Shown: positions 1 to 63,472 of the stretch, one piece after another
How positions within the stretch are numbered: position 1 is the stretch's first letter
Layout of the letters: each line of letters begins with the position of its first letter
Assembly: GCA_024137785.1 (NCBI GenBank)
Contig: JAHRHZ010000084.1
Coordinates: 7,031,573-7,095,572, forward strand
Direction: 5' to 3'
DNA: 64,000 bases
Source: Ginglymostoma cirratum
Lineage: Eukaryota
Notes under the pieces: generated by a model
What the model saw: the letters and a program-made list of their open reading frames with translations, nothing else
Told to the model about the DNA's origin: nothing
Databases searched by the model: none
Program-made: the position numbers and the translations under genes

Positions 1-16
1 AGGTTTCCATAAAAAC

Positions 17-668
17 TGAGAGCTTGGAAAATATCGGTGTTCAAGGGTACCTAGCTGTCCTTGTCAATAAATCACTGAACATTAACATGCAGCTACAATA
101 CGTTTGTAGGAAGGCAGAAAGAAAAATAAACATTAATGCAAGAGAATGTGCGCACAGTGGTAGTGAATCTTTGCTTAAATTATGAAAGAAATTAGTTCAA
201 CTTATGGGTGAGTGATAAATGCTGGCCCAGCCAGCGACACAGTCATCTCATGAATGAATGAAGGAAAGTAAACAACACATGGAGTACCACGTGCAGTTTT
301 GGTCTCATTCTGTCGGGAAGTTAATATTTCCATCATGGGAGAACAACAAAGAATCACCAGACTTGTTCCAGAATGGCTGGATTGTCTTATGAAAACAGAT
401 TGGACAAACTGGGCCCATATTCCTTAGTGTTTCATACAAGAAGAGGTGATCTCATTGAAAACGACAAAATACTTAAAGGGATGGACAGTTGAGATGCAGA
501 TGTTTCCCCTGACAGGGGAGTCTAGAATAAGGAGGCACAATTTAAAAACAAGAGGGATGCCACTTAGGTCTGAGATGAAGAGAAAACCACTTTTTTAAAC
601 AGCAGTTGATTATCCATGGAAATCACCAGAACAGAGGACTGTGGAAGCTCAGTTTTTGAGTACGTAGA
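17..668 (+). mobile_element. Degenerate CR1 LINE 3' ORF2 fragment with a nested LINE-tail insert
   Basis: CR1 C-terminal remnants (RGDLIE, MFPL.G.SR). Paralogous to 5677-6350. Confidence 0.75.
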
Positions 669-669
669 C

Positions 670-963
670 AGGGCGGCACGGTGTCTCAGTGGTTAGCACT
701 GCTGACTCACACCCTTGGGTGACTGTCTGTGTGGAGTTTGCAGATGATCCCGCGTCTGCGTGGGTTTCCTCCGGGTTCTCCAGTTTATCCCACAGTCCAG
801 ACATGTGCAGGTTCGGTGATTGGCCATATTAAATTGCCCATAGTGTTCAGGGATGTGTAGATTTGGTGGGTTTTCGGGGGATGGGTCTGGGTGGGATACT
901 CCGAGGGTCGGTGTGAACTTGTTGGGCTGAAGGGCTTGTTTCGACACTGTATGGATTCTATGG
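670..963 (+). mobile_element. HE1-like tRNA-derived V-SINE
   Basis: ggcacggtg..cagtggttagcactgctg head, gtgtggagtttgca..tgcgtgggtttcctccggg V-domain, CR1-like tail gattctatg. Confidence 0.8.
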
Positions 964-1174
964 TAATAAATTTCTTACTACATACAGAGTGGTGCGGGGA
1001 TGGGGTAGGGAGCTGATTTGGAAAGAAAATATGCATCTTGTTCTCTGGTTCAGGTTGGAACTAGGAACTTGTTGATCTTTCTGATATATTAGATTCTTTT
1101 TGAAAACAATTCCTACCAAATGCAGTAAACCCACAACATGCTCGATTTCACAACGAAATAAGTATTGTTCTTAC

Positions 1175-1471
1175 CTGGAATGAGAACAGTGTAATTTACC
1201 CAGGTTGGATCCGTGAGAGTAGAGTGTGATACCTCACAGACATAAACAGTTCCAGTATGAGCTGGCTCTTCATCTGTCAGAAAACTGGTAACTTCATATA
1301 GTCCTTCAGCATTCTTAGTTCTGAATGTTTCTACTCCAGTTCCAACATTTTGACCATCTTTTCGCCAAGCAATAGTATAATTATCAGGATAGAACGCGGA
1401 CGTTTTACATATACATGTTAGAGAGCCATTTGCAGAAAATTCCGAAATAATCTTCAGAGGATGTGGAGAAG
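1175..1471 (-). CDS. IgSF VJ-C1 gene, exon 3: C1-set domain. Gene continues beyond the left edge (no TM/tail exon in window)
   Basis: Acceptor ttttcaattttcatag|, 297 nt, phase 1-1, donor G|GTAAGA. C1 motifs CKTSAFYP, IAWRKDG, NAEGLYEVTSFL, YVCEVSHSTL. Confidence 0.9.
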
Positions 1472-1608
1472 CTATGAAAATTGAAAAAAAAAAGGTTTTG
1501 TAATTTCCAAGAGTGCATTTACAATACATATCTTTGGGCTTTATCAATCATCAGTGTAGTTGTTCTTTATCTATTAACTGGTTTGAAGAATTTTTTGATA
1601 GGGTTGTG

Positions 1609-1655
1609 AATTACTGTATTAATTCTAATTACTGTATTAATTACTGTATTAATTT
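1609..1655. repeat. Short tandem repeat (aattactgtatt) x3
   Basis: Directly visible. Confidence 0.6.
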
Positions 1656-1990
1656 TAGAGCATGGCTGCTGAGAAAAATCACACTAATATTAAATACAAA
1701 CTCGAGGTATTTGCAACACATTGTACTGTCAAAAGGCAGCATACAAAAATGTAGATTCTGCAACAACTTACTGAGTGAATACATTATTTATTGGTAAAGT
1801 CTCTGGTCTACATTGAATTAATTATTGCTGTTTTGAATGATTCTAATAGGCCCAACCTCAAGTCCTAATGGCTCCAGAGGTGTGTCAATAACATCCCCGA
1901 ACAGGTTGATTACAAATATCTCTGAGACTAAGTCGGGAAAGATAAATGAGCCATTCTTCAAATTGCTATCCAATGATGCCTTGGAAAATG

Positions 1991-2090
1991 AGATAACAAG
2001 GTGTAGAGCTGGATGAACACAGCAGGCCAAGCAGCATCAGAGGAGCAGGAAGGCTGACGTTTCGGGCCTAGGCCCTTCTTCTACTATCTC
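1991..2090. mobile_element. Minimal Penelope-like insertion (inverted pLTR plus 10 nt of tail)
   Basis: 15-bp TSD atgccttggaaaatg at 1976-1990 and 2091-2105. Confidence 0.8.
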
Positions 2091-2384
2091 ATGCCTTGGA
2101 AAATGTTCACTGAAAACATCCAATTGGAATATAATTGAATTTATTTGAAACGTTTGCTGAAATTCGTTGTTCACACTAACAGACGGGATAATTTAGCACT
2201 ATCACTGCTCAATAGAAAAAGGAGAATGATAATCACAATATCAGCTACTTGCTTGGAGTATATCATGTAACTTGTTTCGTAAAAACAAAAATATTGCAGG
2301 GTTGAAAGATGAGGATAGTGAGAGGTTCTACTGCAGAAAGCTAGCACTGACATAAAAGCAAAATGGCAAAGTATTATTCATTTT

Positions 2385-2722
2385 TTAATATAATCATTCA
2401 CAGTATGAGGGTGTCGCTGGCTAGGCACCCCTAATTACCCAGAGGGCAGTTAAGAATCAACCATATCATTGTAGGTCTGGAGTCACACAAAGGCCAGACG
2501 AGGTAGGGATGGCAGTTTCCTTCCCTAAAGGACATTAGTGAACCAGATGGGCTTTTACAACAATCGACAATGGATTCACGGTCATAATTAAATTCTTAAT
2601 GCCAGATATTTACAGTGCTCAAATTCAACCATTTGCTGTTTTGAGGATTCGAACTCAGAACCCCACAACATTACCTGGTGTGCTGGATTCACAGTCCAGC
2701 AATAATACCATGAGGCCATGAC
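2385..2722 (-). mobile_element. tRNA-derived SINE sharing a 3' tail with the LINE family at 62535-63470
   Basis: B-box-like ggattcgaactc near 2645, tail gtgtcgctggctagg near 2412. Confidence 0.6.
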
Positions 2723-2804
2723 TGAGATGATACCAGTCCTCTGTTCCTGAAAATTCACGTCATAAGGTTTGAAAAGAGGTAGCAGCAGAGGTTGTTGATG
2801 CATG

Positions 2805-2895
2805 ATAACAAGGTGTGGGGCTGGATGAACACAGCAGGCCAAGCAGCATCATAGGAGCAGGAAAGCTTGACGTTTCGGGCCTAGACCCTTTTTTC
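2805..2895 (-). mobile_element. Penelope-like pLTR fragment
   Basis: gataacaaggtgtgggg...gacgtttcgggcctagaccc, same family as 24560-25491. Confidence 0.75.
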
Positions 2896-3109
2896 TTCCT
2901 GAATACCTCATGATACATATAATTCACGATGACATAAACTCTATTACTTAAGAAACAAGCAATGGCTAAAACAGGAGACTGTGGGCCAAATAATTCAGTA
3001 TTCATAGGTAAAATGCTAGATGCTATTGGAGGCAGGGTAACAAAGCTCTAAGAATATCATGTGATAAAGCAGAGTTGACATGAAATGAAAGAAAACAGCT
3101 TCTGTTAGG

Positions 3110-3324
3110 AGATAACAAGGTGTAGATCTGGATGAACACAGCAAGCCAAGCAGCATCAGAGGAGCAGGAAATCTGATGTTTCGGGCCGAGACCCTTCTTC
3201 AGAAATCTAGCCCCGAAACGTCAGCTTTCCTGCTCCTCTGATGCTGCTTGGCCTGCTGTGTTCATTCAGCTCCACACCTTGTTATCTCAGATTCTCCAGC
3301 ATCTGCAGTTCCTACTATCTCTGA
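3110..3324. mobile_element. Palindromic mini Penelope-like element (inverted pLTR plus pLTR with tail)
   Basis: About 75-90 bp inverted arms, 15-bp TSD agcttctgttaggag at 3097-3111 and 3325-3339. Confidence 0.85.
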
Positions 3325-3339
3325 AGCTTCTGTTAGGAG

Positions 3340-4260
3340 CTTTTTTGGGGATGTAACTAGAAATATTCTTCCAACTTGTTTCTTTTTTGTTTTGAGATTT
3401 CCAAAATGTTTTCGATAAGTTGATACACAGGTTATTAAACAAAGTTAGTACTCATAAGCCTTAATGTCATATATTAGCATGGATTGAGAATTCAATCATG
3501 AAAAGTAAACAGATGAGGAAAACCTAGGTTTTTTTTTTAGTTTGGCAAGCTGTAGCTACAAGGGTTCCACAATGATCAAAACTTGAGTCTCAGCTAATTA
3601 GAATATGTACTAGTCATTTGTGTGAGAGGATTGAACCTGAAGGGTCCAGGCTTGCTGATGATGAAAGGTTTAGGTGAGAAATCTAGCAGGAATGTGAACA
3701 CAGGGAAACTGCAAATGAAAAGATGGACACTTTGGGTGAGTGAGTAACAACACAGCTGCTGTAAGACAATGTAAAAAGTGAAGATATTCCCTTGGTAGTT
3801 ATTCCCCCAGCCTACCGTGTGGTGTAGTTTTGGTCTTCTTACTTAAATAAGGGCACTAAAGTTCATAACAGAACAGGGAATTGTCCTTTGAAGATGTGCA
3901 ATAGGCTCATCCTTTACTGCCTAGAATTGGGAAGACTTGAGACTTGATCTAATTGAAACATGCGAAATATTTTTAAGAGAGTGGCCAGGGTAGAAAGTTC
4001 TCCTCCTGCCTGAGGGCTCTGAACAAAGGTCAGCCACTTTGGAATTCTAGGGGCAGCGAATGTCCGGTAATTGAATGTAGTCACGATTGAGATCAATAAT
4101 CTCGTGGTAGTAAGGGAATAAAATGGATATTGGGTCAAGGAATGAAAAGATAAGTGGATATTGTGTGAAGCTGACTTTGGTGTCGATCAGTTGGAGTATT
4201 GTTGAATACTAGAGTCGGCTTGAAGCGTCAATTGCTCTCCACCAGCTTCTATTTCATAGG
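3340..4260 (+). mobile_element. Highly degenerate CR1 LINE RT/3' region
   Basis: Remnants resembling DFQKAFDKV, GVPQGS, FADD motifs. Confidence 0.55.
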
Positions 4261-5154
4261 TCCTTATGTTTTACATTATCTAGGTTAGCCGAACGGCCCA
4301 TTTCCCCGTTCTATCTACGGAAAATCTGCGCTATAAACAATTCACTTTCAGCAATGTAAAACATTCTTCTGTTCCACCACAATTGGCATCCATGGACTAG
4401 AGACTAATAACTGGATGGAATACTGAGTCTGCCAATTCTCTACATTTTGAAACTGCCGACAAAACGCACGTACGTGAATGGATCAAATTCGTCACATCCC
4501 ATACTTATAATGAAGGCATAGATTTCGGGCCGGTTAGCTTCAAACTACTGACCTGACTGCATTCTAGGCAACAGCAACATCACAGTTTATAATGGAAGCG
4601 ATTTTATTAAAGCTGGTTGTTGGCTTAGATAATAAATTACAGGGAACAGAGTGGATCACAAATTAAATAGCCAGTCTCACCGCTGATTCCAGCGACGTTT
4701 AAAGCTACAAGGTCGCAAAATCAGACCTTGAGTTTTCTTACCAAATTATCATCTACTCGTTTAAACTGTTCCTCTGGAGTTGGGTCAATCTTTGAAACAC
4801 TAATGTAAAGCGAGTGGCTGGGGGTTGAACCTTCTGAATTGTTAACGATTTTGGGAGGAAGTTGCTCCTGACACGAAGCTGAATGGTTAGACGTTTTTAC
4901 CACTTAGATACCAAGTATTCAGTTTTGACAGCTATGCCCGGTGACCCTTCAGAACTGAAGCATTTGATACCATTTCTGGATGGGGCGACTCGCCCGCTCT
5001 TAAATATCACTCCCGAAATAACATCCACAGCTTCAGCACGGCTTCAAATAGTGGTTAGAACTACGTTTTGGGGAGGCAGTTCTCTTAGGTACAATCTTGA
5101 ACTTCAGTGTTTGGTAATGTGATTCTTTTAATTTAAGGGTGTGGGCAGTCAGAG

Positions 5155-5420
5155 AGTCATAAATATGCACAGCACGGAACAGACCCTTAGGTCAAACCTG
5201 TCCATACTAACCAGATATCCTCAATTAATCCAGTTTCATTCGCCATAATTTGGCTCCTCGAAAACTTTCCTATTCATATATCCGTCCAGATGCCTTTCAG
5301 CTCGTGTAAATTACCAGCCCTCCGACTTTCCCTGGCAGTTAATTCCATACACACACCACCCTCTGAGTGAAAACATTGTCACTTACGTCCTTGTTCAATT
5401 TTTCCCGTCTCACTTCAACC
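5155..5420 (-). mobile_element. CR1 LINE 3' end
   Basis: agagtcata...acagaccctt tail, same family as 60235-60955 and 40985-41350. Confidence 0.7.
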
Positions 5421-5676
5421 GAGAGTTGGAAGGTGGCACAGGATCCAACATGGTCCATTTTACAAACAGGATAATAATTCAGCTACTGTACATACAGCCA
5501 AAATGTAATAGCGATTCTCTGTGCGCATGTTGCATCTCCCCCAAGTTTTATTACCGTTGAGATTATCCGTTTAACACAACTGCACCAATACAGAATCTCT
5601 TCCAGCGGAAATTAACTGTTTCGTGAACTGTAGGAATTCGCAGAAAGAACAGGTGTGAAGAGTGTTTGTTAAATAG

Positions 5677-6350
5677 TGAGAGGTTGGAAAATGTCGGTGT
5701 TCAAGGGTGCCGAGGTGTCCTTGTCAATAAATCACTGAAGGCTAACATGCAGATAAAATAAGCTTGTGGGAAGGCAGAAAAAACTTTAGCCTTTATTGCA
5801 AGAGGCTGTGTGTACAGGGTTGGTGAATCTTTGATTTCATTATGAAAGAATTTAGTTTAGATTATGGATGAATAAGAAATACTGGCCCAGCCAGCGACAC
5901 ACTCATCCCATGAATGATTGAAGCAGTAAAACAAAACACCTGGAGTACCGTGTACAGTTTCTGTCTGCTTATCTCAGGAAAGATGATATCTCCACAGTGG
6001 GAGTACAACCAAGTGTCAACCAGACTTGTTCCCAGGATGGCTGGATTGTCTTCTGAAGAGAGATTGGGCAAACTGGACCCATATTCCATAGAGTTATACA
6101 CAAGGAGAGGTGATCGCATTGAAAACTGCAAAATACTTGAAGGGATGGACAGAATAGATGCAGATAAGATGTTTCCCCTGGCTGGAGTGTCTAGAATCAG
6201 GAAACAGAACTTAAAAATAAAGGGGATGCCACTTATGTCTGAGACGAAGTGAAACTCTTTTTTAACTCAGAGGTTGATTATCCATGGAATTCTCATGGAG
6301 GACTGTGGAAGCTCAGTCTTTAAGTACGCAGTCAGTGATAAATTTCCGAT
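5677..6350 (+). mobile_element. CR1 LINE ORF2 3' fragment
   Basis: ORF 5914-6252: RLVPRMAGLSSEERLGKL..RRGDRIENCKILEGMDRIDADKMFPL. Confidence 0.8.
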
Positions 6351-7574
6351 TACACAGAGTGGTATGGGTTATAATTATAATTCGCAATAGCAGTCCAGCG
6401 CCGCTGCAAGAGATTCTGAATTGCTGTTGTACTAAACAAGTAATCTCAACGATAATCCAACTTGTCAGAGATGCAAATTGCGTACACAGATTTGCTATCA
6501 TATTTTGGGAATAAAATCAAGACAGAGGTGCCGCAGATGCAGTCAATTTGGTCAGTGCCTGATGTTCAGCAGTGGAGCAATGCCTTAGGTCGGTGGAATG
6601 CCAAAATCTGGTTGCAATTAATTAATTCCAGACTATACGGACACTGAATTCGGGAAAATAATGTTGTTGACTAGCTGGAATTTTAAAAAAAAAACACGAT
6701 CAATCATTTCGCTCCAGACACCGTACCAGACAGAAAGGATAATTCCCAACTATTTCTATGGTCAGGATAAGGAAAACTCTTTACGGTAGTCTATAACGGT
6801 ATTTTTTTTCCACCTTCCCGCGCTCAAAGTATTCAGACCCTTTAAAAAATCTCGCTTAAATAATAGCTTCAGAATATCTCATTCAGTATGTCATTTTTTG
6901 CACCATTTCACGTTTCTCGAGTGCGAGATTCCTTCTATCCCTCCTGCAGAAGGTTTAGGATGCAGGACAGCGTAACTCAATACCAGCTGATTTATCCTCA
7001 TCGCCAATGCACAGAAAAGGTTGCAGCTTTTCTTGCAAAAATGATTGAACGTTGGAAGCTTTTTCAAAAAAACAAAATATCCGAACTGCAGTCATCGAGC
7101 TTTGCTGTTGGCAAATCCGCAATTTTCATTTTGGAAATTCCCCGATAAGTCGTCAGCAATGAAACGATTGAACAGTATTCGAAACTCGCAGATTTCATTA
7201 CTATGTAAAGGAGAGTCGAAAATAAGTTGGAGATTTCACTTGCTGGAAGGTGAGCGATCATGGGAAACTCAATTAACGACAGTGATGCGAAATGTGACAT
7301 CAGAGAAGACCGTGAAATGCCTTTTCTGAAAATGTATTTGACTTCCTGCATAAAAGTTTTCGAAATTCTAGCTAAAACAGAAGCGTGCTGTCGCGACTCT
7401 CCCCTGTTGAACCCCACTGACAATTGCTGAATATTCAGCTTTTCACTCCGAAGTTTCAGCAACAAGAGCGCATACTTCACGCGGTGAGTGAGTAATGTTG
7501 GTTAAAGCTGCACCCAAGTTGTTCCATTTTCCCGGATACAAAAGCACACTGGGTGTTCAGTCAAACATCTGTAA

Positions 7575-7742
7575 TGGATCGTAGAATCCCTACAGTATGG
7601 GTAAAATGCTTTTCAACCCATCGAGTCTGCACTCGACCCACTGACCCGCTGAAGAGCATCGCAACCAGACCCCGCCCCGACCCTATCCCTGTAAACCTGC
7701 ATTTGCCTTTGACAAACCACCCAACCTGCACATATTTGGATT
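7575..7742 (-). mobile_element. 3' portion of HE1-like SINE
   Basis: tagaatccctacagt...cacccaacctgcacat, reverse of the SINE tail seen at 30480-30620. Confidence 0.65.
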
Positions 7743-7868
7743 CTGAATCGACGATACAAGGGAGAAATTGCCCGTTATTTGCATGACCTTTCCCAGCCGT
7801 CCTCTCGTTTCAACTTTCCTGTCCCTCTAACTGCCGTGTATTCCACGTTGCTGAGAGTGATTACTCAC

Positions 7869-8171
7869 CGCTTACATTCAGCCGTTGGCCAGTTCCAATT
7901 CCAGTATATTCACCCTGCACACTGCAATAATAGACGCCAGAGTCTCCGAAACGCACATTGTGAATGCGCAGAATGGCGCTGGCTTTGCTGTCAATCAGGA
8001 ACTCTCTCCTCGAATCCTGTTTCGAGCTCAAGAATTCGCTGTCGCCCTCTTTCCACCAGTGCACCGTGATTTGTTTTGGATCTCGGGAGAGCGGGAACGA
8101 GCAGTAAAAAGTCACTGTCTGTCCTACGACCGGATCGGACGGTGTCAGAAATTGAGACACTTTAGCGGCCG
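7869..8171 (-). CDS. IgSF VJ-C1 gene, exon 2: V-set domain with germline-encoded J-like G strand
   Basis: Acceptor ttttcgcgacag|, 303 nt, phase 1-1, donor G|GTGAGT. Motifs GQTVTFYC, VHWWK, LRIHNVRFGDSGVYYC, GTGQRLNV. Confidence 0.92.
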
Positions 8172-8446
8172 CTGTCGCGAAAACAAACAAAAACACCAAA
8201 CGTTTATTTACAGGAGGGCGGCGGCGAGGGGAAAATTTGTAGCAGCAAATAAGGAAACAACTAGGGCTCAGCAGCGCGCTTATGAATACTTAGAAAATCC
8301 CTTTTTGCGAAGTGCTAGAAACTACATAAAAAACGTGACAATTTCAGCCATGAACAGTAATACAAGTCATGCCGATGCACAAATTATTTCGCGTGTACAA
8401 TTTACAACTTATTCTATGTAGCAATCGTTGAATCGAAGACACGTAC

Positions 8447-8501
8447 CTGTACAAGAAAGGATCAGGATGAGTATAGGGTGAAGTTGCGGTCCTCGGGACA
8501 T
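8447..8501 (-). CDS. IgSF VJ-C1 gene, exon 1 (signal peptide MSRGPQLHPILILILSCT)
   Basis: ATG at 8501, hydrophobic ILILILSC core, phase-1 donor G|GTACGT at 8447/8446 that joins in frame to the V exon. Confidence 0.8.
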
Positions 8502-8639
8502 AATAATGTTTGGAGCCCAGTCCCAGCTGAGTACCTGACCATCAATTGGTTTGAGAGGGACGGCAGGGCAAGAGTGGTCGCTTTGTTTTTTTCACTGTCT
8601 CAAGCTCAGTTGATGTGCAGCCGTTCGCTATCACGCTTG

Positions 8640-18504: not shown

Positions 18505-19800
18505 AATCTATTATTTGTGATAGAGAGCATGGTTTTATGTCAGGGAGGTCATGCCTCAATAACTTGATTGAGATTTTGAGGAGGTGATGAAGATGAATGA
18601 TGAGGGGAAAGCTGTTGTATTGCCTACATGGACTTCAGTGAATCTTTGACAAGGTCCCATGGCAGACTGGTACAAAAGGTGAAGTCGCATGGTATCGGGG
18701 TGAACTGGCAAGGTGGATACAGAACTGGCTTAGTCAAAGGACACAGAGGGTAGCGGGTAAGGATGTTTTTCAGAATGGAGGGTTGTGACAAGTGGTGTTG
18801 CACAGGGAACACAGCTGGGGGTGGGGCCTCTGCTGTTCGTGGTCTACATAAATGATTTGGAGGAAAATGTGGCTGATCTAATTAGTAAGTCTGCGGATGA
18901 TACAAAGATTGGCGGAGTTGTGGACAGTGAGGAGAACTGTCAGAGGATACAGCAGGATACAGATCAATTGGAGGCATGGGCAGAAAAATGGCAGATGGAA
19001 TTTAATCCGGACAAATGCGAGGTGATCCATTTTGGAAGGTCAAGTACAGGTGGGAATTATACAGTGAATGGTAGAACCCTTAGGAGTATTGATATGCAGA
19101 GTATTGTGTGCAGGTCCACAGATGGTGGCAGCGCAGGTAGATGTGGTAGAAAAAAATGTCTATGGCATGCTTGCCTTCAATGGAAAGGGCATTGAGTATA
19201 AGGATAGACAAATTATGCTGCAGCTTTATAGAACTTTAGTTGGGCCACACTTAGAATATTGCAGACAGTTCTGGTTACCGTACCATCAGAAGGATGTGGA
19301 TGCTTTGGAGAGGGTACAGAAAAGCTTTACCTGGACGTTGCCCAATATGGGAGATTTTAGCTCTGAACAAAGGTTGGCTAGACGAGGTTTGTTTTCACTG
19401 GAATGCAGGAGGTTGAGGGACGACCTAAGAGAATTTTATAAGATTATTAAAGGCATGGATAGAGTGGAAAGTGTGAGGCTTTTTCCTAGGATGGAGGGGT
19501 CAATTACTGGGGGACACAGGTTCAAGGTGCGAGGAGGGGGTGAGTTTAAAAGAGATGTGCAAGGCCAGTTTTTTACACAAAGGGTGCTGAGTGCCTGGAA
19601 CACGCCGCCAGAGGTGGTGGTCGAAGCAGACACAATAGCAGCATTCAAGAATCACCTGGTCGAATATATGAATAGGAAGGGAATAGAGGGATACAGATCC
19701 TCTGAGTGAAGACAGTTTTAATATAGAAGGGCAAAATACGTCGGCGCAGGCTTGGACAGCTGATGGGCCTGTTTCTGTGCTGTACTGTTCTTTGTTCTCA
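18505..19800 (+). mobile_element. CR1 LINE, RT and C-terminal ORF2 with 3' UTR, frameshifted
   Basis: ORFs 18785-19195 (GVAQGT..GPLLFVVYINDL..SADDTK..WQMEFNPDKC) and 19068-19709. Confidence 0.92.
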
Positions 19801-50134: not shown

Positions 50135-51470
50135 GGTAAGTATTCACCAGTGAGAAGGATCTTGACGTTTGTGAGGACAGTGTGAAACAGGCTGATATGC
50201 TCAAACAGGTTGATGTTAAGAAGGACAATATGCTAGAAATTTTGAAAAAACATGTGGATAGATAAGTCCCTTGGGCCAGATGGGATATACCCAAGGTTTT
50301 TACAGGAAGCAAAGGAAGAGATTGCCACGCCTTTGGCAATGATCTTTGCATCCTCACTATCCACTGAAGAAGTACTAGATGATTGGAGGATGGAGGAAAT
50401 AGGGATAATACTGGGAATTACAGACCAGTCAGTGTTACTTCTGTGGTGGGCAAATTATTGGAGAGGATTCTGAGAAATAGTATTTATGATTATTTGGAAA
50501 AGCATAGTTTGATTATAAATAATCAACATGGCTTTGTGAGGGGCAGGTTAGCCTCACAAGTCTTATTGAATTCTTTGAGGATGTGACAAAACACATTGAA
50601 GAAGGTCGAGCAGTGGATGTGGCATATATGGATTTTAGCAAGGCATTTGATAAGGTTCCCCCTGGTAGGCTAATTCAGAAAGTTAGGAGGCATGGGATTC
50701 AGGGAAATTTAGCTGTCTGGATACAGAATAGGCTGTCCATTAGAAAATAGAGGGCAGTAGTAGATGGAAAGTATTCAGCCTGGAGCTCGGTGACCAGTGG
50801 TGTTCTGCAGGGATCTGTTCTGGGACCTCTGCTCTTTGTGATATTTATAAATGACTAGAATGAGTAAGTGGAAGGGAGGGTTAGTAAATTTGCTGATGGC
50901 ACGAAGGTTGCTGGAGTTGTTGTTACTGTGGATAGCTATTGTAGATTGCGACAAAACATTGACAGGAGGCAGAGCTGGGCAAAGAAGTGGCAGATGGAAT
51001 TCAACCCAGAAAAATGTGAAGTGATTAATTTTGGAAGGTTGAATTTGAATGCAGAATACAGGGTTAATGGCAGAATTCTTGGCAGTGTGGAGGAACAGAG
51101 GGATCTTGGGGTCGACGTCCATAGATCCCTCAAAGTTGTTACCCAAGTTGATAGGGTTGTTAAGAAGGTGTATGGTGTTTTGGCTTTCATTGGCAGAGGA
51201 ATTGAGTTTAAGAGCTGCAAGGTTATGTTGCAGCTCTGTAAAACACGAGTCAGACCACACTTGGAATACGCTGTTCAGTTTGGTCACCTCATTAGAGGAA
51301 GGATGTGGAAGCTTTAGAGAGGTTGCAGAGGGGATTTATGAGGAAGCTGCATGGACTGGAGGGCAGGTCTTGTGAGGAAACGTTGAGGGAGCTGGAGATT
51401 TTCTCACTGGAGCGAAGAAGGATGTTCATTTGACTTCCTAAGGGTCTATTTCTATGCTGTATAACTCTAT
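50135..51470 (+). mobile_element. CR1 LINE RT domain, frameshifted
   Basis: DKSLGPDGIYPRFL, GNYRPVSVTSVVGKLLE, YMDFSKAFDKV, SKFADGTK, RPHLEYAVQF. Confidence 0.92.
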
Positions 51471-52940: not shown

Positions 52941-53869
52941 GAAAACTCTGGAGAGGAGATTTGTATTTTTCCAAATCAAAAGGGTATGCCCCGAAGGGTC
53001 TTCGACTCTCGAGGAGAAGCACGTTAATTTCAAGCTCCCCCAATCTACTGCTGGTCTTTTCTACCCAAAGCCGACAGCATGATCAAATTCACCATTATGT
53101 TCTAAATGGCCTAAGCTAAGCGATGTATCGCTAATCAGTTGAAGGGGCTTATGACCATTCTCTAAAGTGTTTTTAAGGGTGTTGGGCATAGACTGATGCC
53201 CACCCACCCCCCACCCCATTATCTCATAATTCGTTCTTTAAGTTGTCAATTACCCATGGGTCCATCTTCTTCATTAAGTTTTGTTGCTGTGTGGCGTGTT
53301 GACCATGCGCAGCATGGGGTTAACACGTTGATTCAGGATTAAGACAGTCGCTTGCACTCAATGTTGGTGGTTGGAGAACGAGGAACCGCGGGATAGAAAC
53401 CATGATTGATAAGACTGTGGTCGACAGAAGGATCTGAATTAATGTGATTGAAAGAAATGCGCCGGTTTCTTCAAACTACAGCCCCACACGTGAAGTCACT
53501 AATCTCTGATACATTTCATCATCTCGTGTTTTGTAAAGCCATTCAATCGGAATTGTTGCATGTCCTTTGCTTAACAGCGTCCATTTGATTTCCATTGTCC
53601 GCAACTGTTCCGTCTTGCAGCTAGCCCACTCGGGCCTTAGTGTTTAAAATATTATTAATCCTGCACTTCATTTGTAATTTTAGTTTCATTTTTGAGATGC
53701 TTATTCGCATTTTACATTAGTTTTCAGGCAGTTTTTGCAGTCCAATCCCTCCCTTCAAAGCAGCGATTAAAGGAACAAATCATGCTGTGTTGCACATTCC
53801 CATTATTTCTAGAGGACTCAAAGGTAATGTTTCAGTGATGGTGTCATGGTGAAGACAAGTTCCTGGACC

Positions 53870-54175
53870 ACGGAGAAGTGAACAACGAAGTTAGCGCACT
53901 GCCTGACAGCACCAAGGGCACGGGTTCGATTCCAAACTCGGGCGACTGCCTGTGTGAAGTTTGCACATTGTCAGAGTGCCTGCGTGGGTTTCCTTCGGGT
54001 GCTCTGGCTTCCTCCCACAGTCCACAGAAGTGCAGGTTAGGTGGATTGGCTATGTCAAAGTGCCCATAGTGTCTAGGGTGATAAATGTAGGGATAGGGTA
54101 GATCAGGGTGGGATGCTCTGCGTTGGGGCAGTGTGGATTCGATGGGTCAAATGGCCTGCTTCTACGATTCTAGGA
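53870..54175 (+). mobile_element. HE1-like V-SINE
   Basis: gggttcgattcca B box, tgcgtgggtttccttcgggtgctc V-domain. Confidence 0.8.
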
Positions 54176-55034
54176 ATCATGGAGGGAATGTATGAGATTT
54201 TCAGCATATCTCAAGAACCAGCGCCATTCTCCGATGAAGCTACATTCAGCCGCTAAATGTTTCACATTTCTTTTCAGACTCCTGCCGGAGTCAGTTACAA
54301 CTTTGACGGTATCATTCTTTAGAATCTTCCCCTCATTTATAACTTCACTGAAGACATCGGCACCTCATAGCACAAATTGACCCATTTGTTGATATTTTGT
54401 TTTGACATTTTAAAACCAAATTATATGTGCTCTGTCGATTACACCATCTCATATATCTTTCGGTGTTCTTGCTGATTGAATTAACACTAACACCTGGAGG
54501 TCTTATATTTCCATTACTCCTTTGCAGATGCTGCTAACCCCAACTATCGTTTTACAGCATCACGACATTTATTGGGAATACCAAAAATAATGGTGTTAAT
54601 GATCATTGTCGGGAATTAATTGAAGCTGAGGTACTGTCAAAGGCAAGCCACACATTTATGACAACACCGAAATTGAAATTCAATAAATAACTCTATGCTA
54701 ACTGATAAGATAGGGAAATGAATGTTCCTTGAAGGTTGACATTTAGAACATAATTTTCACATTGGAAGTGAAAAACAAATCAACCCAGAGCAATAGCTTC
54801 TACAGCATTGTTTCCATTACACCTTCACAACAAATGTACCTCACAAAGGATAACAATCTCGTCTGGTCATTTGGAGTTAACAGTTGTGATACCGATGAAA
54901 GACTTTTTATTCAAAAGGGAACGTGGGGACTAAATATGGGATTTTAATGCTCATATAATATTTTAATATTTAAGAAGGAGATGAACAAATATTTTTTCTC
55001 AGAAAGCGATACTATTTGGACTTTTCCAAAGGTA

Positions 55035-60234: not shown

Positions 60235-60955
60235 GAGTCATAGAGATGTAGGGCATGGAAACAGACCCTTTGGTCCAACTCGTCCATGCCGACCAGATGT
60301 CCCAAATTAATCTAGTCCCATTTGCCAGCATTTGTCCCATATGCCACTAAACAAATTATTTTCACGTACTCATCCAGATGCCTTTTAAATGTTGTAATCG
60401 TACCAGTCTCCACCACTGCTTCTGTCACCACCCTCTGCGTGAAAAGGTTACCCTTTAGGCCCCTTTTAAATCATTCCCCTGTCATCTGAAACCTATGCCC
60501 TCTAGTTTTAGACTCTCATGCCCTGGGGAAATGAACTCGGCTGTACCCTCTATCCATGCCCCTCATGATTTTATAAACCTCTATAAGGTTACCTCTCAGC
60601 CTCCAATGCTCCAGAGAAAGTAACCCCAGTCTTTTAAGCCATTCCCTATGGCTCAAACACTCCAACCCTGGCAACATCCTTGTAAATCTTTTCTGAATCC
60701 TTTCAAGTTTCACAACATCTTTCCTATAGCTGGGAGACCAGAATTGAATGCAGCATTCCAGAAGTGCCCTAACTAATGTCCTGCAACATGACCTCTCAAA
60801 TCCAATGTTCAATGCAATGACCAAGAAAGGCAAGTGTACCAAACACCTTCTTCACTAAACTGTCAACCTGCCATTCTACTTTCAAGGAACTATGAACCTG
60901 CACTCCAAGGTCTCTTAGTTCAGCAACACTGTCCAGGACATTGCCATTAAATGTA
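60235..60955 (-). mobile_element. CR1 LINE 3' portion
   Basis: ORF 60516-60842 LECCIQFWSPSYRKDVVKLERIQKRFTRMLPGL..RLRGNLIEVYKIMRG. Confidence 0.9.
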
Positions 60956-62534: not shown

Positions 62535-63472
62535 CCTATTCAGGCATCATCTTCAGATGCTTCACCAATGACATTCCCTCCATCATAAGGTCAGAATGGG
62601 GGTGTTCACTGACGATTGCATTATGTTCAGCACCATTCGTGACTCCTCAGATACTAAAGCAGTCTGTGTTCAAATGCAACAAGATCTGGATAATATTCTG
62701 GCTTGGGCTGACAAGTGGCAAGTGACATTCACACCACGCAAATGCCAGGTTATGACCAGCACCAATAGAAGTCATTCTAACCACCACCCCTTGACATTTA
62801 GTGGTGTCACCATCGCTGAATTCCCCATTAGCAACATCCTGGGGGTTAATATCGACCACATAAACACAGTGGCTACAACAGCAGGCAAGAAGCTAGGAAT
62901 ACTGTGGCCAGTAACTCACCTCCTGATCCCTCAAAGCCTGTCCACCATCGACAAGGCACAAATCAGGAATGTGATGGAGTACTCCCCACTTGGCTGGATG
63001 AGTGTAGCCCCAACAATACTCAAGAAGCTTGACACCATCCAGGACAAAGCAGCCCGCTTGATTGGCATTACATCCACAAGCATCCATTCCATCCATCACC
63101 AATGCTCAGTAGCAGAATTGTGTACTATCTACAAGAGTCGCTGCAGAAATTCACCAAAGATCTTCATACAGCACCGTCCAAACCCATCACCACTTCTATC
63201 TAGAAGGACAAGGGCAGCAGATATATGGGAAGATCACCACCTCCAAGCTCCCCTCCAAGCCACTCACCATCACGACTGAAAATATATCACCGTTCCTTCA
63301 CTGTCGCTGAGCCAAAATCCTGGAATTACATCCTTAATGGCATTGTGTGTCAACCTACATTAGGTGAACTGCAGCAATTCAAGAAGGCGGCTCACCACCA
63401 CCTTCTCAAGGGCAACTAGGGCTGGGCAAGAAATGCTGGTCAGCCAGCGATGCCTACATCCCACAAATGAAC
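62535..63472 (+). mobile_element. LINE (CR1/L2 clade) RT C-terminus and 3' tail
   Basis: ORF 62596-63279 FTDDC..QQDLDNILAWADKWQVTF..KAQIRNVMEYSP, tail aaatgctggtcagccagcgatgcctacatcccacaaatgaa. Confidence 0.88.

What the first reader, a model, noticed from the sequence alone, without database searches (positions are those of the whole stretch)
1175..8501. Non-rearranging antigen-receptor-like gene: leader, germline-joined VJ and C1 domains
Seen: one exon encodes a full V domain including YYC-SVQGEYTGI-GTGQRLNV, a J-like GxG..L.V strand already joined to V. I found no RSS or separate J segments in the 6.4-kb intron. A phase-1 splice then leads to a C1-set domain (FYP, WxKDG, YxCxVxH). Known: C1 domains are largely confined to Ig, TCR, MHC, tapasin, SIRP and B7-type proteins, and germline VJ-C1 genes (PRARP/VJC1 type) are proposed relatives of the pre-RAG antigen-receptor ancestor. 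Inference: this may be an uncharacterised cartilaginous-fish member of that class. A divergent SIRP-like or B7-H6-like gene is the alternative.
Basis: partly seen in the sequence, partly recalled or inferred. Interest (0 to 1): 0.8.

Follow-up and report, generated by a model that had tools for sequence, protein, structure and literature searches.

The report
Shark non-rearranging V-C1 receptor gene
This is a real, transcribed nurse-shark gene for a receptor built like one pre-joined antibody light chain. It is the conserved, tyrosine-free-tailed member of a large SIRP-like receptor family of sharks, rays and chimaeras that annotation pipelines already predict, so it is useful but not an orphan.

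Summary
On the minus strand lie a leader exon (8501-8447), a V exon with a built-in J-like strand (8171-7869) and a C1-set exon (1471-1175). All are phase 1 with GT-AG borders. No recombination signal lies in 1100-8600.

RNA contigs of one run stop exactly at both borders of the C1 exon, and the intron beside it has no depth.

Each exon, searched separately, is 79% identical to one 323-residue zebra-shark protein in which V is followed directly by C1. Separate V and C1 trees both place the window beside that protein. They sit inside an orthologue group that spans sharks and rays in both trees and includes the chimaera in the V tree.

In the orthologues the gene continues with an uncharged membrane segment. 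A roughly 65-residue basic tail follows, with no tyrosine in 12 of 13 species and an invariant CxRC motif. Five species have an isoform that skips the membrane exon in frame. Those exons lie outside this window.

The wider family has ITIM-rich paralogues and was found only in cartilaginous fish. Pipelines name it inconsistently, and I found no paper on it.

This scan has already reported the same family several times on other DNA of this genome as "SIRP-like V-C1 receptors". Some of those reports are on the same piece.

Deep kinship is unresolved: SIRP, light chain and UrIg2 score about the same.

The parts
8447..8501 (-). Leader exon: ATG plus 18 codons plus 1 base (MSRGPQLHPILILILSCT), a split signal peptide, phase-1 donor GTACGT
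   Evidence: tblastn of orthologues P0161, P0004 and P0162 aligns their residues 1-18/20 here at 67-70% identity.
8172..8446 (-). Leader intron (275 bp)
   Evidence: GT...AG borders with a polypyrimidine tract.
7869..8171 (-). V exon with in-frame J-like G strand (…DSGVYYCSVQGEYTGIGTGQRLNVS), phase 1 in and out
   Evidence: Pfam V-set 2.4e-9 and Ig_3 1e-11. 79% identity to P0161 residues 20-119. Model pLDDT 93.8. V tree places it beside Stegostoma.
1472..7868 (-). V-C1 intron (6.4 kb), filled with high-copy repeats; no RSS, no J or extra Ig exon
   Evidence: RSS scan found nothing. Family profile scans found nothing. Very high repeat depth at 1801-3400 and zero depth at 3401-5200 in RNA runs.
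1175..1471 (-). C1-set exon (…SAFYPDNYTIAWRKDGQ…YVCEVSHSTL…), phase 1 in and out
   Evidence: Pfam C1-set 9e-11. 79% identity to P0161 residues 121-218. RNA contigs of run X1 end exactly at 1175 and 1472 (table 8, records 3 and 4). C1 tree places it beside Stegostoma.
1..1174 (-). Start of the next intron; the connecting-peptide/TM exon and tail exons lie beyond the window's start
   Evidence: tblastn of orthologue residues 219-323 finds no exon here. Contig record 3 of X1 carries 114 further letters that do not lie on 1-6000.

Best explanation
The finding is the 5' three-quarters of the nurse-shark orthologue of a conserved, single-lineage chondrichthyan gene. That gene encodes a type I membrane protein with this layout: split leader, one compact V domain with a germline J-like G strand, one C1-set domain, a short stalk, an uncharged transmembrane helix, and a basic cytoplasmic tail of about 65 residues.

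It never rearranges, because V and J are one exon and there is no RSS.

It is one branch of a large V-C1 receptor family found only in cartilaginous fish. Most other members carry several ITIM-like tyrosine motifs. In overall design (inhibitory members, tail-variant members, V plus C1 ectodomain) that family works like the SIRP paired receptors.

Inferred mechanism:
- The V domain binds a conserved, probably host, ligand.
- This branch has neither ITIM/ITAM tyrosines nor a charged transmembrane residue. It therefore cannot signal through SHP phosphatases or DAP12-type adaptors.
- It acts instead through its conserved CxRC and polybasic tail, or as a non-signalling binder or decoy.
- Skipping the 38-codon membrane exon in frame gives a secreted form.

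Shown: the exon structure, the orthology, transcription with exact C1 exon borders, and the features of the orthologues. Inferred: the nurse-shark transmembrane segment and tail, ligand binding, and the mode of signalling.
For: **Exons, phases, splice sites and domains:**

**Orthology.**
- The V exon and the C1 exon are each 79% identical to adjacent parts (residues 20-119 and 121-218) of Stegostoma P0161. They are 73% and 71% identical to Hemiscyllium P0004.
- In separate V and C1 trees the window is sister to Stegostoma (SH-aLRT 86 and 87), inside the carpet-shark group (98* and 90).
- In the V tree the orthologue group has 16 rows, including rays and Callorhinchus (94). In the C1 tree the sharks group at 99* and sharks plus rays at 87.

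**Family.**
- 28 aligned members share F-x-C-x-F-P…WWK-x-G…YYC…GNGTG-x-x-L-x-V, then a C1 domain.
- There is a clear score gap. Members score at least 80 bits per domain against family profiles. The best outsider scores 49 bits on V and has no C1 hit.
- Every member whose source I looked up is chondrichthyan.

**Tail.** The tail has no tyrosine in 12 of 13 orthologues. CxRC and K-K-H-R-K-K-like motifs are conserved, and the transmembrane segment is uncharged. In 5 species an isoform X2 lacks exactly the 38-residue stalk-plus-membrane segment and stays in frame.

**Transcription.** X1 contigs end at 1175 and 1472, each carrying further unmatched sequence. Intron depth beside the exon is 0.

**Linkage.** Orthologue and paralogues lie on a contig of the same length in at least 8 species.
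Against: - The nurse-shark transmembrane and tail exons are outside the window, so intactness of the whole gene is not shown.
- The V-to-C1 junction itself was not read. Only 6 kb could be laid and the loose-end letters at 1175 and 1472 were not printed. It rests on the exact exon borders plus the orthologues.
- Nurse shark differs at two positions that are invariant in the other 14 orthologues covering them: Arg to Ser after the second V cysteine, and Asn to Ile, which removes the NGT sequon in the J-like motif.
- Expression is low. Two of the three contig runs had no depth on the exon, and the poly-A run had about one read pair.
- No ligand, partner or function has been tested.
Confidence: 0.8

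Rival explanations
1. It is a true member of the SIRP family proper. The shark family and tetrapod SIRP-alpha/beta/gamma would share an ancestor to the exclusion of Ig/TCR, UrIg and PRARP, and this gene would be its SIRP-gamma-like non-signalling member.
For: - Pipelines most often name family members 'tyrosine-protein phosphatase non-receptor type substrate 1-like'.
- A ray paralogue (P0043) has the V-C1-C1 layout and aligns to human SIRP-alpha over all three domains (57.2 bits).
- The family profile scores 114 bits on SIRP-alpha 2wng_A.
- Paralogue tails carry repeated xTYAxLxL and xEYAxxQ-like motifs. From my own memory these resemble the SIRP-alpha tail; this was not tested.
- Earlier notes of this scan reached the same label.
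Against: - Per domain, Ig light chains score as well or better. Kappa scores 54 bits over two domains against SIRP-alpha's 57 bits over three. Lambda V-C scores 73 bits against the family profile.
- With the V-only profile, SIRP-alpha is not among the best 60, so it scores under 46.2 bits. Lambda V scores 55, CD79b 48 and VNAR 47.
- This gene and its orthologues have one C1 domain, not two, and a long tail unlike any SIRP tail.
- No bony-vertebrate member was recovered.
Confidence: 0.3
2. [quoted passage not shown]
For: - It has the VJ-C1-TM architecture with a split leader, as described for such genes (PMC10751288; PMC12227049).
- Foldseek's 50 best matches to the orthologue model are all antibody light chains (E about 1e-15).
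- The C1 exon's best single-domain matches are Ig lambda C (35 bits) and UrIg2 C domains (27-29 bits).
Against: - I held no PRARP sequence, so nothing was compared with PRARP.
- As I recall it, PRARP is reported from bony fish to birds with an ITIM. This family gave no bony-vertebrate hit, and this branch has no ITIM.
- UrIg2 V did not appear among the V matches.
- The light-chain excess in Foldseek partly reflects how many light chains are in the PDB.
Confidence: 0.1
3. The nurse-shark copy is decaying or truncated: a transcribed pseudogene that has lost its membrane or tail part.
For: - There are two substitutions at positions that are otherwise invariant in the orthologue group.
- Depth in RNA runs is low and patchy.
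- The 3' exons were not seen.
- A decayed paralogue relic lies in the same window.
Against: - All three visible exons are open, with good splice sites.
- Identity to Stegostoma is the same in V and C1 (79% each), and branch lengths are ordinary (0.15).
- Transcripts are spliced at both C1 borders and continue into further sequence.
Confidence: 0.1
4. It is a germline-joined immunoglobulin light-chain or TCR-type gene, that is, a real antigen-receptor locus.
For: One pipeline name is 'immunoglobulin lambda-1 light chain-like'. Light chains are the best Foldseek matches.
Against: - Identity to light chains is only 22-25%.
- Orthologues have a membrane anchor and a 65-residue tail.
- The gene is conserved 1:1 from sharks and rays to chimaera (V tree and shared tail).
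- There is no RSS and no cluster of V, J or C segments in 64 kb.
Confidence: 0.02

Closest known systems
Predicted orthologues in other cartilaginous fish. Examples: Stegostoma tigrinum 'NCR3LG1-like isoform X2' (P0161); Hemiscyllium ocellatum XP_060694223 'immunoglobulin lambda-1 light chain-like' (P0004); Callorhinchus milii LOC103185897 (P0028, P0172, P0173)
   Same: Same leader, V(J) and C1 at 71-79% identity in carpet sharks. Same exon order. Both domain trees agree.
   Different: Nurse shark has Ser for Arg after the second V cysteine and has lost the NGT sequon of the J-like motif. Its transmembrane and tail exons are not in the window.
SIRP-alpha/beta/gamma (V plus two C1-set domains; ITIM tail, DAP12-binding TM, or very short tail; PMC12975943)
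   Same: - N-terminal V domain with a J-like strand, followed by a C1-set domain.
- A family with inhibitory-tailed members and members with variant tails.
- Pipelines use this name.
- A ray paralogue has the V-C1-C1 layout.
   Different: - This branch has one C1 domain.
- Its tail is long, conserved and tyrosine-free, with CxRC.
- Its transmembrane segment is uncharged.
- Sequence similarity to SIRP is no higher than to Ig light chains.
- CD47 binding is unknown.
UrIg / UrIg2, the non-rearranging shark VJ-C genes (PMC12227049)
   Same: Single-exon VJ, split leader, C1-type constant domain, non-rearranging, and found in elasmobranchs. UrIg2 C domains are among the best matches to the C1 exon (27-29 bits).
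   Different: The paper gives nurse-shark UrIg2 nine C domains (with its first three paired with UrIg's N-terminal three) and says UrIg has no transmembrane region. Here there is one C domain. UrIg2 V is not among the V matches. This gene sits in a multigene family.
NKp30 (NCR3)
   Same: A non-rearranging VJ-type V domain. NKp30 is among the tied best structural matches to the nurse-shark V model and shares the highest identity of the 50 listed (Z 12.7, rmsd 2.4, 99 residues aligned, 27% identity). A V-only isoform in a sawfish is auto-named NCR3-like.
   Different: From my knowledge, NKp30 has no C1 domain and has a charged transmembrane segment. The Z values of antibody V, I-set and VNAR domains are tied with it. 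It is not in the top 60 by sequence profile.
[quoted passage not shown]
   Same: VJ plus C1 plus TM, non-rearranging.
   Different: Not compared, because I held no sequence. As I recall, PRARP is reported with an ITIM and in bony vertebrates. This branch has neither feature.

Membership tests
Chondrichthyan V-C1 receptor family (unnamed; 'SIRP-like' in pipelines and in this scan's notes) | V domain with the family signature and a germline J-like strand | tested here: met
   The window's V piece scores 127 bits against the family V profile. The next-best piece in the window scores 9 bits. See also the alignment.
Chondrichthyan V-C1 receptor family (unnamed; 'SIRP-like' in pipelines and in this scan's notes) | C1-set domain directly after V | tested here: met
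   The C1 piece scores 131 bits against the family C1 profile. Pfam C1-set 9e-11. The exon phases fit, and orthologues have V119 followed by C1 at 121.
Conserved tyrosine-free-tail orthologue group within that family | Both domains group with the same orthologues | tested here: met
   V tree and C1 tree: sister to Stegostoma, inside the carpet-shark clade.
Conserved tyrosine-free-tail orthologue group within that family | Uncharged TM plus a roughly 65-residue basic tail with CxRC and no tyrosine | not testable with these tools
   Seen in 13 orthologues.
SIRP family | One V-set plus two C1-set domains (PMC12975943) | tested here: not met
   There is one C1 exon here and one C1 domain in every orthologue. 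Some paralogues have two (P0043).
SIRP family | ITIM tail, a basic TM residue, or a very short tail | tested here: not met
   Orthologue tails are about 65 residues long and have no tyrosine in 12 of 13. The transmembrane segment is uncharged. This was judged on orthologues only.
SIRP family | Groups with SIRP to the exclusion of other V-C1 proteins | tested here: inconclusive
   Scores for SIRP-alpha, kappa/lambda light chains and UrIg2 are comparable. I could fetch no reference sequences for a tree.
SIRP family | Binds CD47 | not testable with these tools
   This needs a binding assay.
Rearranging Ig/TCR or germline-joined IgL | RSS-flanked segments, or a light-chain-type V-J-C cluster encoding a secreted chain | tested here: not met
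   No RSS in 1100-8600. No other V, J or C segment in the window. Orthologues are membrane proteins.
UrIg / UrIg2 | VJ followed by three or more C domains; V and C domains grouping with UrIg | tested here: not met
   There is one C1 domain. The UrIg2 chain is absent from the V-domain matches. C-domain similarity is only 27-29 bits.
PRARP | Sequence orthology to chicken, reptile or fish PRARP; ITIM in the tail | not tested
The orthologue tails lack tyrosine.
NKp30 (NCR3) | A single VJ domain, with no C domain | tested here: not met
   A C1 exon is present and transcribed. The V fold similarity is tied with many others.

The most novel reading that the evidence does not exclude
The tyrosine-free branch is not a silent SIRP-gamma-like binder. 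It would instead be an old, slowly evolving receptor with its own signalling mode. Its invariant cytoplasmic CxRC motif beside a palmitoylatable CC-x-CC cluster would recruit a kinase or adaptor through a shared zinc site, as CD4 and CD8-alpha recruit Lck. Its membrane-exon-skipped form would be a secreted regulator.

Because it has stayed 1:1 since before chimaeras and sharks split, it could be the founding member from which the fast-evolving ITIM paralogues arose. It could also be one of the nearest non-rearranging relatives of light-chain-type V-C genes.
Probability: 0.1. Interest if true: 0.7.

Novelty: new member of a known kind. Interest (0 to 1): 0.4.

Why it matters
Non-rearranging VJ-C1 genes of cartilaginous fish are the material from which the origin of antibodies and T-cell receptors is being reconstructed (UrIg, UrIg2, NKp30, PRARP).

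This gene adds a well-defined case. It is a branch of the shark V-C1 family conserved 1:1 across sharks and rays, with a chimaera counterpart by V domain and tail. It has a distinctive tyrosine-free tail and a conserved soluble splice form. It sits among fast-evolving inhibitory paralogues.

It gives a stable anchor for rooting that family, for testing whether the family is truly SIRP, and for looking for a conserved ligand. By itself it does not change the picture of antigen-receptor origins.

Tried and rejected
1. **Germline-joined IgL or a rearranging locus.** Rejected: no RSS, a membrane tail in orthologues, and 1:1 conservation.
2. **UrIg/UrIg2 membership.** Rejected on domain number and lack of a V match.
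3. **B7-H6, B7-H3 or tapasin orthology**, as some pipeline names suggest. The names are mutually inconsistent for one orthologue group. The two-domain structural matches to the B7 family (Z 15-16) are tied with Neph, PD-L, butyrophilin, SIRP-gamma and UrIg2, so they say nothing specific.
4. **Search for bony-vertebrate relatives.**
   - The full HMMER scan with the V exon gave only chondrichthyan family members among those I looked up. The best outsiders were a turtle multi-V protein and a fugu TCR-alpha V at no more than 49 bits.
   - The family-profile word search gave only chondrichthyans plus one coelacanth MHC-I.
   - The tail-only search found only two carpet-shark orthologues.
   - These searches have limits (word index, best 150 shown), so absence is not proven.
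5. **ESM Atlas.** It gave only generic V-C IgSF clusters.
6. **Laying reads.** The junction letters at 1175 and 1472 were not among the loose ends printed. X3 and X4 held only repeats.
7. **The look-up of encoding contigs was closed.** I therefore obtained no synteny and no exon structure of the orthologues.
8. **Joined protein.** The spliced model was searched exon by exon.
9. **Domain trees with named reference families** (SIRP, PRARP, NKp30, IgL, TCR, tapasin). Not possible, because no tool gave me those sequences as stored proteins.

Full report
**What is in the sequence**

- Leader exon, 8501-8447: ATG, 18 codons (MSRGPQLHPILILILSCT) and one extra base, with donor CAG|GTACGT.
- V exon, 8171-7869: it follows a 275-bp intron and a pyrimidine-rich acceptor.
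- C1 exon, 1471-1175: it follows a 6.4-kb intron and has the acceptor TTTTCATAG|.

All borders are phase 1, the usual rule for immunoglobulin-superfamily domain exons.

Pfam scores are above the curated cut-offs. The V exon scores V-set 37.8 bits and Ig_3 45.6 bits. The C1 exon scores C1-set 42.4 bits.

The V exon ends with …DSGVYYCSVQGEYTGIGTGQRLNVS. The J-like GxGxxLxV strand is therefore part of the same exon.

An RSS scan (heptamer, 12 or 23 spacer ±1, nonamer, at most 3 mismatches) found nothing between 1100 and 8600. Scans with the exons and with family profiles found no further V, J or C exon in the intron.

The V domain is compact: 59 residues separate the two cysteines. The AlphaFold model of the nurse-shark exon (pLDDT 93.8) shows no regular C'/C'' strands. 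It therefore sits between V-set and I-set. This explains why I-set proteins, shark IgNAR V (VNAR) domains and CD79b appear beside antibody V domains in the searches.

**Transcription**

I could lay reads once, and on at most 6 kb. I chose 1-6000, which holds the C1 exon and what follows.

- In run X1, two contigs cover the exon. One ends exactly at 1175 and carries 114 further letters that do not lie on the stretch.
- The other ends at 1472 and carries 71 further letters.
- X1 depth is 21.9 in the 1201-1400 bin and 4.8 in 1401-1600. It is 0 in the 1601-1800 intron bin.

The exon is therefore transcribed and spliced at both predicted borders.

Several limits apply.

The V-to-C1 joint is inferred from these borders plus the orthologues.
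- Runs X3 and X4 held only the intron's repeats.
- The poly-A run X6 had about one read pair on the exon, so expression there is low.
- The tissue of X1 is not known to me.

**What it is**

The exons were searched separately.

A full HMMER scan with the V exon found many proteins of 220-420 residues with this V at the N-terminus.

- The closest is zebra-shark P0161 (323 aa). The V exon is 79% identical to its residues 20-119, and the C1 exon is 79% identical to its residues 121-218.
- Epaulette-shark P0004 gives 73% and 71%.

Orthologues were found in these genera:

- Sharks: Chiloscyllium, Heterodontus, Carcharodon, Mustelus, Scyliorhinus, Heptranchias, Pristiophorus.
- Rays: Narcine, Hemitrygon, Hypanus, Pristis.
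- Chimaera: Callorhinchus.

Their automatic names contradict one another. They include 'immunoglobulin lambda-1 light chain-like', 'tapasin-related protein-like', 'NCR3LG1-like', 'CD276 homolog', 'tapasin-like' and 'tyrosine-protein phosphatase non-receptor type substrate 1-like' (SIRP-alpha-like). The group has no settled identity.

Separate maximum-likelihood trees were built for the two domains.

- V tree (70 rows): the window is sister to Stegostoma (SH-aLRT 86), inside the carpet-shark clade (98*). The orthologue group of 16 rows has support 94 and includes rays and Callorhinchus.
- C1 tree (60 rows): the window is again sister to Stegostoma (87), inside the carpet-shark clade (90). Sharks group at 99* and sharks plus rays at 87.
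- The chimaera C1 domain is a long branch that the quick tree did not place with the group. Its V domain and tail do match.

**The parts that the window lacks**

In the orthologues the C1 domain is followed by four parts.

- A short stalk without cysteine.
- An uncharged membrane helix (…PWWIY-x-C…).
- A juxtamembrane cysteine cluster (CCKxCK).
- A net-basic tail of about 65 residues.

The tail has no tyrosine in 12 of 13 species. It has an invariant C-x-R-C motif and a K-K-H-R-K-K-like motif near the end.

Five species have a predicted isoform X2 that lacks exactly the 38-residue stalk-plus-membrane segment and stays in frame. That would be a secreted form.

tblastn finds none of these parts in window 1-1174.

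**The wider family**

The alignment of 28 members shows a shared V(J)-C1-TM plan. Outside this orthologue group the tails are different. They carry several tyrosine motifs of ITIM type, such as …TYAALDL… and …TVYAQTK…. One skate member (P0043) has two C1 domains.

Family profiles separate members from everything else. Members score at least 80 bits per domain. The next-best protein scores 49 bits on V and has no C1 hit.

All members whose source I looked up are cartilaginous fish. The best outsiders were a turtle multi-V protein and a fugu TCR-alpha V.

Orthologue and paralogues lie on a contig of the same length in at least eight species. The two chimaera genes have consecutive LOC numbers. 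The cluster is therefore old.

Earlier notes of this scan report the same family repeatedly in this genome as 'shark SIRP-like V-C1 receptors'. Some lie on the same piece: 158 kb before this window, and 102, 253 and 347 kb beyond it. I did not check those notes. They agree with what I see, and they mean this family has been found before by the scan. This window also holds a decayed relic of a paralogue (see the items noticed in passing).

**Deep relationships**

These stay open.

- The family V-C1 profile scores 73 bits on a lambda V-C chain in one stretch and 64 bits on UrIg2. It scores 114 bits in total on three-domain SIRP-alpha.
- The V-only profile scores 55 bits on lambda V, 48 on CD79b and 47 on VNAR. 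SIRP-alpha is not among the best 60, so it scores under 46.2 bits.
- The two-C1 paralogue scores 58 bits on UrIg2, 57 on SIRP-alpha over three domains, and 54 on kappa chains over two domains.
- Foldseek's 50 best matches to the orthologue model are all antibody light chains (E about 1e-15, 22-25% identity). The PDB is crowded with light chains, which inflates this.
- The representative-based structural search ties B7-H6, Neph, PD-L, butyrophilin, SIRP-gamma and UrIg2 at Z 14-16. It confirms a C1-type constant domain (rmsd 1.2-2.0 Å to MHC class II, IgG and IgNAR C domains).
- For the nurse-shark V model, antibody V domains, NKp30 (27% identity over 99 aligned residues), I-set domains, VNAR and CD79b are tied at Z 12-13.

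I could not obtain named reference sequences as stored proteins, so no outgroup tree was made. I also held no PRARP sequence.

In papers, non-rearranging VJ-C1 genes of sharks are represented by UrIg and UrIg2 (PMC12227049). NKp30 and PRARP are cited as other such genes (PMC10751288). I found no paper on this family.

**How it most likely works**

Shown:

- It is a non-rearranging gene.
- It is spliced and transcribed.
- It is conserved 1:1 across sharks and rays, with a chimaera counterpart by V domain and tail.

Inferred:

- It encodes a type I surface protein whose V domain binds a ligand. The ligand is probably a conserved host molecule, because this branch evolves slowly and stays single-copy while its ITIM-tailed neighbours multiply.
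- Orthologues lack tyrosine motifs and a charged membrane residue. The protein therefore cannot use the SHP-phosphatase or DAP12 routes that define SIRP-alpha and SIRP-beta (PMC12975943).
- It may signal through its conserved CxRC and polybasic tail, or act as a non-signalling binder. The membrane-exon-skipped isoform would give a soluble version.

In design the family works like the SIRP paired receptors. Membership in the SIRP family proper is not established, and two defining features are not met by this branch.

**Verdict**

The claim needs trimming in three ways.

- The gene is not an orphan.
- Pipelines already predict it in many species, and this scan has already met its family several times.
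- No special closeness to the antigen-receptor ancestor is shown.

Its own point of interest is the conserved tyrosine-free tail and the soluble splice form.

Noticed in passing
window 53671-54331 (+): A decayed relic of a paralogue of the same family. It has a leader-like stretch and the first half of a V domain (…CCTFPLFLEDSKVMFQ*W…GEDKFLD) with a stop. A SINE-like insert follows, then the last part of a C1 domain (EGMYEIFS…FSR*MFHISFQTPAGVSYNFD) with a stop. No leader intron or V-C1 intron is visible, so it may be a processed copy.
   Followed up: partly
window 1801-3400 and 601-1000: Very high-copy repeats lie inside and just after the V-C1 intron. RNA-contig depth reaches the hundred-thousands. 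Many reads join 2816 to 3278 on opposite strands.
   Followed up: partly
window 7869-8171 (-), codons for …YYC-S-V… and …TG-I-GTG…: Nurse shark differs at two positions that are identical in all other orthologues covering them. Arg becomes Ser after the second V cysteine. Asn becomes Ile, which removes the N-glycosylation sequon (NGT) inside the J-like motif.
   Followed up: partly
window 1113-1175 (-): Reading through the C1 donor gives 20 more codons and a stop (GKNNTYFVVKSSMLWVYCIW*). tblastn extends the orthologue alignment into this stretch, pairing it weakly with …SFPWWIYICI… of the orthologue's membrane exon. This is probably chance. It could also give a short unspliced secreted form.
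   Followed up: no
window 1175-1248 (run X1, contig record 3): The contig that ends at the C1 donor carries exactly 114 further letters. That equals the length (38 codons) of the membrane exon that orthologue isoforms skip. It is suggestive only, because the letters were not shown.
   Followed up: no
window 18761-19706 (+), 50868-51314 (+), 60519-60851 (-), 62572-63276 (+): These open pieces look like reverse-transcriptase fragments of LINE-type elements. One (18878-19111) also matches the spurious N-terminal extension of a predicted family protein (P0058). Apart from the finding and the relic, I saw no other gene in 8.6-64 kb. That region was only scanned with family proteins and profiles and by eye over open frames; no Pfam scan was run on it.
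   Followed up: no
window 51898 (+): An RSS-like match: perfect heptamer CACAGTG, 12-base spacer, then nonamer AAAAAAAGC. It is one of 4 such matches in the window against 1.4 expected from shuffles. No V-like frame lies beside it by the family profile scan, so it is probably chance.
   Followed up: partly
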